A DNA stretch of 64,000 bases. Source: Euprymna scolopes (taxonomy: Eukaryota). The notes under the pieces are model-generated. The model was not told where the DNA came from. It did not search any database and saw only the letters and a program-made list of their open reading frames with translations. The translations under genes were made by a program, and so were the position numbers. Shown here one piece after another: positions 2,070 through 59,132 of the stretch (positions are counted from its first letter, which is position 1; each line of letters begins with the position of its first letter). The stretch lies in assembly GCA_053919585.1 (NCBI GenBank), contig CM132798.1. One strand, given 5' to 3'.

Positions 2070-2349
2070 TGCTTCCATTCAGTCTCCAAAGACAAAGGAT
2101 ACCCCTGTATGGGCAGCTGCGTGTGAAATTGTGAGGCAAGGGTGGTGCAATCACCAACCACACCTCTGCTGAATCGGCACTGTTTGAATCCAGTGGCAAG
2201 GAGAAGTCCAGGATGACTGGAAACAATGCTGAGATAAGCGGAGAGCACATACAGCACCTAGAAGTCCCAAATAGTAACCCATTTAGTACTGACCAGGTTC
2301 AACGTTGCTTAACTTTGGTGATCCAGCAGAACCGGTGTGTCAACGTGAT
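2068..2349 (-). mobile_element. 5S rRNA-derived SINE (SINE3-like); 5S-like head 2349-2248 plus non-5S body
   Basis: The minus strand reads ATCACGTTGACACACCGGTTCTGCTGGATCACCAAAGTTAAGCAACGTTGAACCTGGTCAGTACTAAATGGGTTACTATTTGGGACTTCTAGGTGCTGTA, a diverged invertebrate 5S rRNA, and continues into ~180 nt of unrelated sequence with no oligo-T terminator. Confidence 0.75.
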
Positions 2350-2547
2350 TAGATAGATAGATAGATAGATAGATAGGTAGATAGATAGATAGATGCGTGT
2401 GATNNNNNNNNNNNNNNNNNNNNNNNNNNNNNNNNNNNNNNNNNNNNNNNNNNNNNNNNNNNNNNNNNNNNNNNNNNNNNNNNNNNNNNNNNNNNNNNNN
2501 NNNNNNNNNNNNNNNNNNNNNNNNNNNNNNNNNNNNNNNNNNNNNNN

Positions 2548-53000: not shown

Positions 53001-53306
53001 GGGCCCGTGGCACAGTGGATAGAAACATTGAGTTTCTACGGTTCCAGGTTAGCATACTTAGAAGATAGCGGTTTCAATTTTAGCCAATGCGGGTCAGAGG
53101 TGAGACAACAACTATGGAAGGCAGTAATTACTGCGAATAAGGTTACAGGACTCAGCATTCCTATCTCGTCACAGTTAACCACCTGAAGAAGACAAGAGAA
53201 TAATTTGGTCGAGACGTGACGAAACAACAACTATGGAGATGAGGATTGCAGTCCACAAAAAAAATGAATGCACAAATTATGAAGCTTCATCTCAAAGGAT
53301 TCCAAA
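53001..53306 (+). mobile_element. SINE-like element: intron-containing pre-tRNA-Arg(TCT)-derived head (53002-53095) plus HHR-like tail
   Basis: Acceptor stem GGCCCGT/GCGGGTC; anticodon arm TTGAG-TT TCT A-[~17 nt]-A-CTTAG; CTGAAGA..GTC GAGAC at 53183-53215; tail gatgagga...tcatctcaaa like the family. Confidence 0.65.
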
Positions 53307-54999: not shown

Positions 55000-55080
<81 letters not shown>

Positions 55081-55770: not shown

Positions 55771-58262
55771 TCACGGTGCCATTTTAATCTCCTTATATTC
55801 GTTTATTCCTTGCTCTTCTTTATCTCTTTCGATTTTATTAGCATCTACCTCAGTTACTATTCTCGGTTTTGATATAACCTTTTCATCGGCTAAATCATTC
55901 CCTAATAATAGTGAAATGCCTTTCTTTGGTAAATTTTCCACAACTCCTACTTCGACCGGACCGCTTACTGTGGTCGAATCGAGGGGGATTCGGTGGAGTG
56001 GGACATCAAGCAAATTTCAACTAATTCCCTGAATGGTGACGGATTCACCGGTTGCTGTTTTCGGTCCGTCCGGCATCTCACTTTTTAAAATCAGAGATTG
56101 GGTTGCCCCCGTATCTCTCAGGATTTTTACTGGTCGTCGATTTTGGTGATTATCTACTGTATGTACCAGACCCTCTGATATAAATGGTTGGTATCCTTTT
56201 CTAATACTATCCTCATTGTCTTTTGTAGAGATCTTGCACGAAGTAATGAAGCCTTGAGGTTTATAATCTATCCCCTTTTTACGTTCGGTATCTTTCTTTA
56301 CCGGGCAGTCCATCATGATGTGTCCTACATTCTTACAGTAGTGGCACGTTATGGGTTTCCACCTGTCGATCAGTTGATAGGTTGGTGGTCGATTTACTTT
56401 CGGGGATGTATTTCTTGGGCTGGGAGGTCGATATACAGTACTTTCTGGACCTGTATTCCAACTAGAGTTCGTAACAGACATTCTCCGAAGGTTTGTGTGA
56501 ATTTCACCCTCGAATGGGTCAATTTTATTTCTACCCGTCTTGTGTGTAAGAGCATACTCGTCGGCTAGAATCGTCATTTCATAGGCTGTAGCGATCTGGC
56601 GTTCGTTCAAAAACACTTTTAGGTCGTCAGGGATACAACATTTAAATTCTTCCGTCAGGATCATCTGCTGGAGTCTATTATAATCGGACTGTGCATGTTT
56701 AGCAGAAATCCACCTATTAAACTGGGTTTCTTTCTGCCGAAAGAATTCCACGTAGGTTTGCCCGTTCTCTTTTCGGTATGACCTAAACTTCTGTCGATAT
56801 GCCTCGGATACCAATTCATACGATTTGAGGATGGCGGATTTTATAACATTATAATTCGAACAATCCTCGGTCGAGAGAGAGGCATACACCTCTTGCGCTC
56901 CCTCTTAATGCGGTCTGTAACAGTATCGGCCAAACTTCTAGAGGCCATTTTGCACTCAGGGCAATCTTTTCAAAATGTTGGAAGTACCCGTCCACATTCG
57001 ATTTGTGGAACGTCGGTACAAGGCGGGCATGTTTGGGGACATCAAACTCCTCCCGTCTTTCTTGGTGGGGTTCGGGCATACCTTCTCACAGAGTTCTTAA
57101 AACTGCTTCGTCGACTAAGAAATTGTCGACGAGACATTGTGTTACTATCCTAACAATGCTCTTCTCATACCTGGCCTAACGTCTAGTTCATAATGTCTAC
57201 CTATTGCTAAGATGCTGTCTTTTCTAAATTTGCATCATTCTTCAAAAGTAGGAGAATCTAGGAATTCTTGTATTCCCGACATGTTGAACTAACTAGTCCT
57301 CGCTACCTCAAATGTGTTCGACTATCCAGGGTGTCTTTAGGGAGGGTATATTCCGGCACAACCCCCCAATTTGTTACGACGTATCCCAGTCCTACTGGGG
57401 ACGGTAGAGATGGGTGACGTAACAAAATATATTGAAAAAATAAAGTTTCCCAGGTTCCTTGATAATGCGTTGTTATGGGAATGGAACAACCGTCTCGAAG
57501 ACAACAATAAAATGAAATGTACTGGACAACGAAATCACATAAGAAATAACGAGGACAAATATCGTCGAAAAATTAACAAACTTTTATTCATATAAAAAAA
57601 TAAATAAAATTCAATTCAAGAAAAGAAAATTAAATATGCCTAACTAAATGAAATGATTTAATGATTCAAATTCTACCTAGAGAAAAATATATCAACAGTT
57701 AATGTTCACATAAAACAAGAAATCGTCTGCTCAATTAGATACAGGTTCTAGGGTAAGAGAGAGATGTTGGAGAAATGAAAGTTTTGGTTGAAAAACTCAC
57801 TGAATGTCCTTTGAAATGTGACCTTTCTTTTGTCTCTTTTTTTTTAATATATATTTCTTTCCTGTAAATTGTTTATATTTGATTACGCGCGCAGGTTAAT
57901 TTCCATATTTTTGTCCTTCGGATTATTTATGTTTCATTATGCGCGTGCGTGTTAATTGCTCCAAGTATTTGTTTCCGAAGCTCATTGAAGCCCTTGATTT
58001 ATAGTAAAAATTTCACTGCTCCATTGATCCTTCCTTCACTGGGTTCATTCTTTTCTTCAGTCAATATTCTAATTTTGACCGCTGATCAAAACAGATCTTT
58101 ACCGTCGCCGCCAACATCGGCTTGTGTCGTTGATATTTACCTCTGCGACACTGCTACCACGCTGCCGTCGCCTTTCGCCGGTTTCACCACCCCGACCTTC
58201 GCTGACTTACGTTTTGTCGCTTTGAAGCGCGAAGCTCCACTGCCTATTGACAACTTTTTCAG

Positions 58263-58640: not shown

Positions 58641-58711
<71 letters not shown>

Positions 58712-58899
58712 GAAAAGAGAAAGTTCAATTCCACAAAGAAGACTTATCCGGATAATGTCAAGTTCAACAATAATTATTGGAGCTTATACAGTAGGACAAT
58801 AAGAGTATGAAATGAGGACGCAAAACTATATATTGATAGATATAGAATGGATCATTTATTGAATAATGGAATACAGGCAAAATTTGGGGGATAGAAGGG

Positions 58900-58949
58900 A
58901 CTCTTTATGCCAGGGCATTTCGAAGCCTAATGCTTCTCATCAGAAGAGT
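58900..58949 (-). ncRNA. Canonical type I hammerhead ribozyme
   Basis: ACUCUU-CUGAUGA-GAAGC.AUUAG.GCUUC-GAAA-UGCC.CU.GGCA-UA|AAGAGU: intact core, three paired stems, AUA triplet. Confidence 0.88.
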
Positions 58950-59132
58950 AGAGAAGGTGCTAGGTAGCATGGGGAAGATGCACCATCTAGCGTAAAGTTC
59001 ATTAGGGATGAAAGAGATTAAGAGGAATTTCTATAATTCCTCTTAATCTCTTTCGTAAGGTTCATTAGGGACGAAATATCCTAAATTGCTCTTTATTTTC
59101 GCCATTAATATTATTTTTCATTGTTATCGTGT

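What the first reader, a model, noticed from the sequence alone, without database searches (positions are those of the whole stretch)
58900..58949. Fully intact canonical type I hammerhead ribozyme on the minus strand
Seen: every catalytic-core position is present (CUGAUGA, GAAA, AUA triplet). Stem I is a perfect 6 bp (ACUCUU/AAGAGU), stem II is 5 bp and stem III is UGC(C)/(G)GCA. Predicted cleavage is between 58906 and 58905. An AATAAA follows ~45 nt downstream (58860-58855) and the Gmr1-like LTR starts ~260 nt further on. Unlike minimal Penelope HHRs it has a real stem III and could cleave as a monomer. Inference: it is a Penelope pLTR or retrozyme remnant that may still be active.
Basis: seen in the sequence. 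Interest (0 to 1): 0.75.

Follow-up and report, generated by a model that had tools for sequence, protein, structure and literature searches.

The report
Hammerhead motif in Penelope-type retroposon copy
The hammerhead ribozyme motif is real and sequence-intact, but it is one of about 500 identical copies carried by an abundant, protein-less jumping element that inserts the way Penelope-like retrotransposons do, so it is an ordinary member of a known kind and not a stand-alone active ribozyme gene.

Summary
Observation confirmed. Window 58949-58900 (-) is a complete type I hammerhead: CUGAUGA, GAAA, A15.1-U16.1 and A17; helix I 6 bp, helix II 5 bp, helix III 4 bp with a CCUG loop. Cleavage would fall between 58906 and 58905. 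On its own, the 50-mer's lowest-energy fold is the three-way junction.

It is not a solitary motif. The 38-nt core occurs 492 times exactly in this 5.9-Gb genome. It belongs to a dispersed non-coding retroposon of about 1.15-1.3 kb with one hammerhead, variable 5' truncation, (TA)n at the 3' end, and inverted partner pieces abutting many 5' ends. These are the insertion scars described for Penelope-like elements (PLEs). The window copy is a 5'-truncated copy (59029-58712) with a short zig-zag inverted tail (59076-59030).

It is neither a pLTR flanking an RT gene nor a tandem retrozyme. A sister family about 28% diverged keeps the same hammerhead except for one loop-3 base, so source elements conserve the block. 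Individual copies decay neutrally, with no covariation.

Activity is untested:
- Rfam models miss it.
- Longer transcripts are predicted to prefer other folds.
- There is no excess of copies starting at the cleavage site.

This scan has already met hammerhead-bearing, Penelope-dependent elements many times in this genome, though not this family.

The parts
58900..58949 (-). Type I hammerhead motif: helix I 6 bp, CUGAUGA, helix II 5 bp with AUUAG loop, GAAA, helix III 4 bp with CCUG loop, A17
   Evidence: scores 85.1 bits with the model built from family copies (by construction)
58905..58906 (-). Predicted self-cleavage site, between A17 (58906) and A1.1 (58905)
   Evidence: Follows from standard hammerhead numbering applied; not tested experimentally
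58712..59029 (-). Body of a 5'-truncated copy (long 3' form) of a ~1.15-1.3 kb non-coding retroposon family; it matches positions 933-1326 of a full-length reference copy at 94% identity
58641..58707 (.). (TA)33 microsatellite at the element's 3' end (a tail, a target, or both). Nearly all copies end in (TA)n and several also have (TA)n upstream
59030..59056 (-). Inverted duplicate of the copy's own 5' end (reference positions 954 to 927). With 59029-59009 it forms a near-perfect 46-nt palindrome
59054..59076 (-). Short direct piece of the element (reference positions 949-971, 100% identical) upstream of the inverted piece. This is a zig-zag junction, reminiscent of the 30-40-bp 'tail' of PLE insertions
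   Evidence: comparison with PMC8557442 is inference
58855..58860 (-). AATAAA, conserved in the family but internal to the element; not its 3' end signal

Best explanation
The motif is the single internal hammerhead of a high-copy, protein-less retroposon family that is most probably copied by a Penelope-like element's reverse transcriptase/endonuclease. The window holds one dead-on-arrival, 5'-truncated insertion of it.

Shown:
- The motif is intact.
- It is a family feature: 492 exact copies of the core, and probably thousands of copies of the element.
- Full-length copies are about 1.15 kb (short 3' end) or about 1.3 kb (long 3' end), have no ORF or tRNA head, and carry one hammerhead 160-300 nt from the 3' end.
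- Copies show variable 5' truncation, (TA)n ends and abutting inverted 3'-terminal partner pieces.
- A sister family about 28% diverged keeps the hammerhead, differing only at one loop-3 base.

Inferred:
- Mobilisation is by PLE-type target-primed reverse transcription at (TA)n.
- The hammerhead block (the hammerhead plus about 40 nt upstream and about 20 nt downstream) is kept by selection on source elements, either as a self-cleaving motif or as a fold the enzyme needs.
- With a 4-bp non-palindromic helix III it is built to fold as a monomer. It has no recognisable helix I/loop II tertiary contact, so cleavage, if any, is expected to be slow at cellular Mg2+.
- Templates that were successfully copied were uncleaved at this site.
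- In this truncated copy the motif has no role of its own.
For: - Motif and fold.
- Copy number: at least 40 copies of the 131-nt region at 95-98% identity; at least 150 identical 50-mers, with the list ending at contig 18; 492 exact 38-mer cores against 0 for the reversed control; 432 exact copies of the adjacent 38-mer, with only a few of the ~100 places listed per search shared, which implies several thousand copies.
- Element anatomy: shared homology ends about 985 nt upstream in three copies. One of them, examined in detail, has no ORF of 60 aa or more in the element, no tRNA and no Rfam hit. The family model finds only one hammerhead in each of the three.
- 5' truncations, two 3' ends and inverted partners. 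At least 10 of 59 sampled loci have an inverted 3'-terminal piece directly abutting the 5' end.
- Window junction.
- PLE hallmarks (inverted 5'-truncated partner, 30-40-bp tail, microsatellite bias including (TA)n, hammerhead near the 3' end, non-autonomous derivatives): PMC8557442.
- PLEs are very abundant in this genome: 15,395 GIY-YIG candidates and intact 806-aa frames.
- Conservation: the L063 relative is 90% identical over the hammerhead against 70% elsewhere (Fisher p = 0.003). The modal sister-family hammerhead differs only by CCUG to CUUG in loop 3.
- In copies selected on the downstream anchor, the hammerhead is 5.6% diverged against 7.5-10% in the flanks.
Against: - No autonomous partner with a matching 3' end was found. 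The dominant PLE family (C-terminal GIY-YIG) has no hammerhead within 1.4 kb downstream of its stop and no similarity to this element. The one related copy beside a GIY-YIG fragment (L063) lies tail-to-tail with it and is not part of it.
- Covariation gives no support among 66 copies: 93.0% of cells are paired against 93.2% in shuffles.
- The conserved block is wider than the ribozyme, so the constraint need not be catalysis.
- Copies starting exactly at the cleavage site are not enriched: 6 hits, 4-5 of them one-base deletions, against 9 and 4 at offsets -3 and +3.
- Rfam hammerhead models do not report the site.
- In 110-318-nt contexts helices I and II have a predicted probability near 0. 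Shuffled flanks do almost as badly (mean ddG 3.0 +/- 2.3 against 5.5; 15% of shuffles are at least as bad), so this is weak evidence either way.
Confidence: 0.7

Rival explanations
1. It is a remnant of the terminal repeat (pLTR or 3' UTR) of an autonomous Penelope-like element, and the 1.2-kb 'family' is that element's deletion derivative or solo terminus.
For: Hammerheads of PLEs sit in pLTRs near the 3' end, and non-autonomous PLE derivatives share 3' ends with their autonomous partners (PMC8557442; bioRxiv 10.64898/2026.07.22.740005). The PLE-style scars are present. One pair of copies lies in the same orientation 1,096 bp apart.
Against: Three full-length copies share nothing beyond about 985 nt upstream and have no ORF. 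Thirty loci around GIY-YIG domains show no similarity apart from one adjacent tail-to-tail insertion. The 1,096-bp pair is two composite truncated units, not a head-to-tail tandem. Only one PLE family was sampled, so a rarer partner is not excluded.
Confidence: 0.13
2. It is an active retrozyme-type unit: transcripts are cut at hammerheads, circularised, and the circles serve as retrotransposition templates.
For: The type I hammerhead is intact. Retrozyme-like ~410-bp tandem arrays with Rfam-grade hammerheads do exist elsewhere in this genome. Animal retrozymes are thought to be PLE-dependent.
Against: There is only one hammerhead per element, and no second motif in the window. No short tandem repeats appear in 59 sampled loci or around the site. 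Copies have fixed 3' ends and graded 5' truncations, which indicates a linear template. There is no excess of junctions at the cleavage site.
Confidence: 0.04
3. The element is a LINE-dependent SINE-like or truncated non-LTR repeat, and the hammerhead match is a chance or relic motif with no ribozyme function.
For: 5' truncation and microsatellite tails also occur with some LINE clades. No covariation was seen. Rfam reports nothing. Loose hammerhead descriptors hit random sequence about once per Mb. Retrotransposed copies were uncleaved.
Against: A compact all-Watson-Crick hammerhead is expected about 0.002 times per genome by chance (my estimate). The motif is preserved at 49 of 50 positions between families that differ by about 28%. 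The inverted partners are independent 3'-terminal pieces lying head-to-head, which is the PLE pattern, and not the contiguous 5' inversions of L1 twin priming. The genome is rich in PLEs and in hammerhead-bearing repeats.
Confidence: 0.1

Closest known systems
Hammerheads of Penelope-like elements (min-HHRs in pLTRs; Cervera & de la Pena 2014, PMC4209133)
   Same: It is a type I motif in a retroelement with PLE-style insertions. It lies near the 3' end, occurs in massive copy number, and its role in the element's life cycle is unclear.
   Different: Metazoan PLE hammerheads have a 1-2-bp helix III with a small palindromic loop and are thought to act as dimers. This one has a 4-bp helix III with a non-palindromic tetraloop. 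In that respect it resembles the monomer-active variants with a large helix III and no recognisable tertiary contacts described for fungal and protist PLEs. It is also not in a repeat flanking an ORF.
Animal non-LTR retrozymes (Cervera & de la Pena 2020, PMC7229834; Li et al. 2026 preprint)
   Same: It is a non-autonomous, non-coding element carrying a type I hammerhead and is presumed to depend on PLEs.
   Different: Retrozymes are 170-400-bp tandem units, each with a hammerhead, that yield circRNAs. This family is dispersed, about 1.2 kb long, has a single hammerhead, and has defined 3' ends with 5' truncations.
Hammerhead-tailed SINE-like elements
   Same: It is a short to medium non-coding retroposon with a hammerhead in its 3' part and PLE-type scars.
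   Different: No tRNA or Pol III head was found. The element is much longer, and its hammerhead has a stable helix III.
Rfam RF00163 Hammerhead_1
   Same: Same core and same open-helix-I topology.
   Different: It does not reach the gathering score, or even E<=10. The RF00163 hits in this genome are 44-45-nt motifs with a 4-bp helix II and a 2-bp helix III with a UCGA loop.

Membership tests
Hammerhead ribozyme, type I (motif definition) | Conserved core: C3 U4 G5 A6 N7 G8 A9, G12 A13 A14, A15.1-U16.1 pair, H17 not G | tested here: met
   CUGAUGA, GAAA, A-U pair, A17
Hammerhead ribozyme, type I (motif definition) | Three helices around the core, with helix I open and helices II and III closed by loops | tested here: met
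   the MFE and centroid of the 50-mer are exactly this junction (helices of 6, 5 and 4 bp)
Hammerhead ribozyme, type I (motif definition) | Tertiary contact between helix I (loop or bulge) and loop II, needed for fast cleavage at physiological Mg2+ | tested here: not met
   helix I is a plain 6-bp duplex, and both continuing strands are pyrimidine-rich and cannot pair. No loop 1 or bulge is recognisable. A 7-nt complement to loop II about 55 nt upstream is noted but untested.
Hammerhead ribozyme, type I (motif definition) | Curated covariance-model score (Rfam RF00163 or other hammerhead families) | tested here: not met
   no hammerhead family listed, even at E<=10 on 81 nt
Hammerhead ribozyme, type I (motif definition) | Helices supported by compensatory changes | tested here: inconclusive
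   93.0% of cells paired against 93.2% in shuffles, with one double change. The copies are young and decay neutrally. The sister family changes only a loop base.
Hammerhead ribozyme, type I (motif definition) | Site-specific Mg2+-dependent self-cleavage | not testable with these tools
The genomic proxy, copies that begin at the cleavage site, shows no enrichment.
Penelope-like element pLTR | Terminal direct repeat flanking an RT plus GIY-YIG ORF | tested here: not met
   no ORF and no flanking direct repeat. Thirty GIY-YIG loci are unrelated.
PLE-mobilised (non-autonomous) element | PLE-type insertion scars: variable 5' truncation, an abutting inverted 5'-truncated partner, a short tail, and microsatellite target bias | tested here: met
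   compared with the description in PMC8557442
PLE-mobilised (non-autonomous) element | 3' end shared with an autonomous PLE of the same genome | tested here: inconclusive
   not shared with the dominant family.
Animal non-LTR retrozyme | Short (about 170-400 bp) head-to-tail tandem units, each with a hammerhead | tested here: not met
Animal non-LTR retrozyme | Circular RNA of unit length | not testable with these tools

The most novel reading that the evidence does not exclude
The ~115-nt block centred on this monomer-type, tertiary-contact-free hammerhead is a cis-acting module that a Penelope-like reverse transcriptase needs, either for recognition or for controlled RNA processing. This would explain why it stays at 49 of 50 positions between two families that are otherwise about 28% diverged, while templates are copied uncleaved. 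If so, this very abundant and simple family would be a handy system for asking what hammerheads do for PLEs, which the literature calls unclear.
Probability: 0.2. Interest if true: 0.6.

Novelty: new member of a known kind. Interest (0 to 1): 0.3.

Why it matters
Hammerheads in Penelope-like elements and their non-autonomous derivatives are well documented, and this scan has already met many in this genome, so the finding adds a family and not a principle. Two details are mildly useful.

First, it is an animal example with a stable, non-palindromic helix III. That monomer architecture has been described for fungal and protist PLEs but is not typical of metazoan ones, and the Rfam models miss it. 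Hammerhead censuses based on Rfam will therefore undercount such motifs.

Second, the ribozyme block is strongly conserved between diverged families even though the copied templates were uncleaved. This bears on the open question of what hammerheads do for PLEs.

Tried and rejected
- Rfam at the gathering score and at E<=10 on 701 nt and 81 nt gave no hammerhead family, only chance snoRNA/miRNA-like hits.
- I searched for a 'fossil' of in vivo cleavage, meaning copies whose 5' end is exactly at A17/A1.1. There was no enrichment over offsets -3 and +3, and most hits were one-base deletions.
- Covariation across 66 copies is indistinguishable from shuffles.
- In the search for an autonomous partner, 30 GIY-YIG loci show no similarity and no hammerhead. 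The single related hit (L063) is a neighbouring tail-to-tail insertion of a sister family.
- The upstream-flank 38-mer count (30 against 492 for the core) first looked like differential conservation. It was rejected because that 38-mer carries a subfamily-specific CpG-to-TpG variant.
- The 'alternative fold dominates' result is true in prediction. However, shuffled upstream flanks behave similarly, so it is not evidence of a designed switch or of inactivity.
- The (TA)n pair at 55001-55077 and 58641-58707 scored as inverted repeats, but this is microsatellite self-complementarity and not a terminal inverted repeat.
The sister family was therefore read only from the matched strings of a pattern search.

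Full report
1. THE OBSERVATION

On the minus strand, 58949-58900 reads helix I 5' strand ACUCUU, core CUGAUGA, helix II GAAGC/GCUUC with loop AUUAG, GAA, helix III A-UGC/GCA-U with loop CCUG, A17, and helix I 3' strand AAGAGU. Every invariant hammerhead position is present. G10.1-C11.1 and A15.1-U16.1 are canonical, and the cleavage triplet is AUA. The AATAAA at 58860-58855 is also there.

RNAfold gives the three-way junction as MFE and centroid of the isolated 50-mer (-11.2 kcal/mol). The energy itself is unremarkable (z = -0.5).

My descriptor scan finds only this site in the 64-kb window. In 40 Mb of composition-matched random sequence, a loose descriptor hit 37 times and a >=6/5/4-bp version hit once. 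That corresponds to about 0.1 and about 0.003 expected per window. A compact, all-Watson-Crick version is expected about 0.002 times in the whole 5.9-Gb genome. That last figure is my own product of base frequencies, not a tool result.

The one dissonant result is that Rfam reports no hammerhead family here at any threshold tried. The RF00163 hits elsewhere in this genome are 44-45-nt motifs with a 4-bp helix II and a 2-bp helix III closed by a palindromic UCGA loop. The extra 6 nt in helix III probably explain the miss, but I could not run the model by hand to confirm this.

2. IT IS A FAMILY FEATURE, NOT A LOCAL ODDITY

- The 131 nt around the motif has at least 40 copies at 95-98% identity.
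- A covariance model built from the copies returned 150 hits, all at the maximal score. That list reached only contig 18.
- The exact 38-nt core from CUGAUGA to A17 occurs 492 times, against 0 for the reversed control.
- The adjacent downstream 38-mer occurs 432 times. Of the ~100 places listed for each search, only about six are shared. If the two 38-mers decay independently, this implies several thousand copies in all. This is a rough estimate.

3. ANATOMY OF THE FAMILY

Alignment of 20 copies shows that the window copy is 5'-truncated and that most copies extend further upstream. All end in (TA)n, and there are two alternative 3' ends about 140 nt apart.

Three long copies share homology for about 985 nt upstream of the hammerhead and then diverge. 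In one of them, examined in detail, the shared region has no ORF of 60 aa or more, no tRNA and no Rfam match. The family model finds just one hammerhead in each of the three.

I mapped 59 further loci onto a full-length reference copy, which showed:
- recurrent 5' ends at reference positions 33-48, marking full length as about 1.15 kb (short form) or about 1.3 kb (long form);
- graded 5' truncations everywhere else;
- in at least 10 loci, an inverted piece of the element's 3' terminus directly abutting the 5' end of the direct copy (head-to-head), with several more within about 120 nt.

Several copies also have (TA)n on the upstream side, so insertion is into (TA)n microsatellites.

The window copy matches reference positions 933-1326 (59029-58641, including the tail). 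It is preceded by an inverted copy of positions 954-927 (59056-59029) and then by a direct copy of positions 949-971 (59076-54). This zig-zag creates the 46-nt palindrome at 59054-59009.

4. WHAT KIND OF ELEMENT THIS IS

Craig et al. 2021 (PMC8557442) list the features of Penelope-like element insertions:
- an inverted 5'-truncated copy adjacent to the insertion;
- 30-40-bp tails at an end;
- a strong microsatellite target bias, including (TA)n;
- hammerheads near the 3' end;
- non-autonomous derivatives that share 3' ends with autonomous families.

Here the inverted partners are independent 3'-terminal pieces. They are not the contiguous 5' inversions produced by L1 twin priming, which favours a PLE-type mechanism (inference). 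The genome is full of PLEs: there are 15,395 first-look GIY-YIG candidates, many with intact ~806-aa frames ending about 84 nt after the EN domain.

I did not find the partner. The sampled dominant PLE family has no hammerhead within 1.4 kb downstream and no similarity to this element. The one related hit, in L063, is a sister-family copy lying tail-to-tail with a truncated PLE at a (TA)n tract. PLE dependence is therefore well supported by the scars but not proven by a shared tail.

5. NEITHER A pLTR NOR A RETROZYME

No ORF is flanked by this sequence, and there is no direct repeat of it in the window. There are no short tandem units and no second hammerhead in the window. The one same-orientation pair, 1,096 bp apart, is two composite inverted-plus-direct truncated units and not a head-to-tail tandem. 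Fixed 3' ends with graded 5' truncation indicate a linear template that contained the hammerhead uncleaved.

6. IS THE RIBOZYME UNDER SELECTION, AND DOES IT CUT?

Individual copies decay neutrally. Core positions are hit, notably the CpG in UUCGAAA, and pairing is no better than in shuffles.

At the level of source elements, however, the block is conserved:
- A sister family (5,316 first-look candidates, copies 88-92% identical to L063) is only about 70% identical to this family outside the motif but 90% identical within it in a single-copy comparison (Fisher p = 0.003).
- Its modal hammerhead differs from ours only at one loop-3 base, CCUG to CUUG. The G17 seen in L063 is a minority variant.
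- Among copies chosen only for an exact downstream anchor, the hammerhead is 5.6% diverged against 7.5-10% in the flanks.

The conserved stretch also includes about 40 nt upstream and about 20 nt downstream, so the constraint may not be catalysis alone.

On activity:
- The 4-bp non-palindromic helix III suits a monomer. Cervera & de la Pena 2014 (PMC4209133) contrast such variants in fungal and protist PLEs, one of which was monomer-active in vitro, with the metazoan norm of 1-2 bp and a palindromic loop, which works as a dimer.
- There is no recognisable helix I/loop II tertiary contact. By established hammerhead enzymology this predicts slow cleavage at cellular Mg2+.
- With 12 nt or fewer upstream, the hammerhead fold is the MFE. 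With 60-80 nt upstream, or in 111-318-nt contexts, it lies 2.7-6.6 kcal/mol above the MFE and helices I and II have a probability near 0. The competitors are upstream CUUCUC pairing with GAGAAG and CCUAAUG pairing with CAUUAGG.
- Shuffled upstream flanks give 3.0 +/- 2.3 kcal/mol, and 15% are at least as bad. This is therefore the generic fate of a weak 50-nt fold and not evidence of a switch.
There were 6 hits, 4-5 of them single-A deletions, against 9 and 4 at offsets -3 and +3. This shows no enrichment.
- RNA evidence could not be obtained.

7. VERDICT

The motif is real and intact, and its architecture is a little unusual for an animal. It is the standard cargo of an abundant, non-coding, PLE-style retroposon, and the window copy is a truncated insertion with no evident promoter of its own. 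This is a new member of a known kind.

The scan has already recorded many hammerhead-bearing, Penelope-dependent elements in this genome (141 notes hold those words). Those notes call the genome a cephalopod or mollusc, which I did not verify.

The Gag-like ORF downstream (SCAN plus zinc knuckle) belongs to a separate LTR-type element and has no demonstrated connection with the hammerhead.

Noticed in passing
window 59009-59054: Near-perfect 46-nt palindrome. It is created by an inverted duplicate of the truncated copy's own 5' end, with a further 23-nt direct piece upstream (59054-59076). This is a zig-zag template-switch junction. Rfam gives chance miRNA-like hits on it.
   Followed up: partly
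window 58990-59003 versus 58926-58932 (minus strand): CCUAAUG about 55 nt upstream is a perfect 7-nt complement of CAUUAGG (loop II plus its closing pair). It could be a pseudoknot partner or the core of the competing inactive fold. In the one sister-family copy in hand, the two sides show different single changes with no compensation.
   Followed up: partly
window 56017-56889 (-): A 290-aa ORF with a SCAN domain (E = 4.9e-10) and a zinc knuckle.
   Followed up: partly
window 2245-2361 (-): 5S rRNA match at 39.0 bits, just above Rfam's gathering score of 38, with several non-canonical pairs. It may be a 5S pseudogene or a 5S-derived repeat.
   Followed up: no
window 51218-51631: Tandem array with a 46-bp period and at least 9 units, the central ones 98-100% identical.
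   Followed up: no
L033:8096-8144 (+) and L051:2444-2492 (-): A second, unrelated hammerhead-like family with the same architecture: 6-bp helix I, 4-bp helix III with a palindromic CAUG loop, and a U-U at the base of helix II. One copy has CUGAUGA and the other has a mutated CUGGUGA core. Both score 27 bits with the model built here.
   Followed up: no
G000:C8:10432194-10435515 and G000:C3:89840417-89842627: Tandem arrays of ~410-bp units, each with an Rfam-grade (48-53 bits) minimal type I hammerhead. These are retrozyme-like arrays elsewhere in the genome.
   Followed up: no
window 53001-53306: An earlier first-reader note describes a tRNA-headed SINE with a Penelope-type hammerhead tail here. 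Neither my descriptor nor the family model reports a hammerhead at that place.
   Followed up: partly
window (whole): 2,502 N positions are present (masked or gaps). They were left untouched.
   Followed up: no
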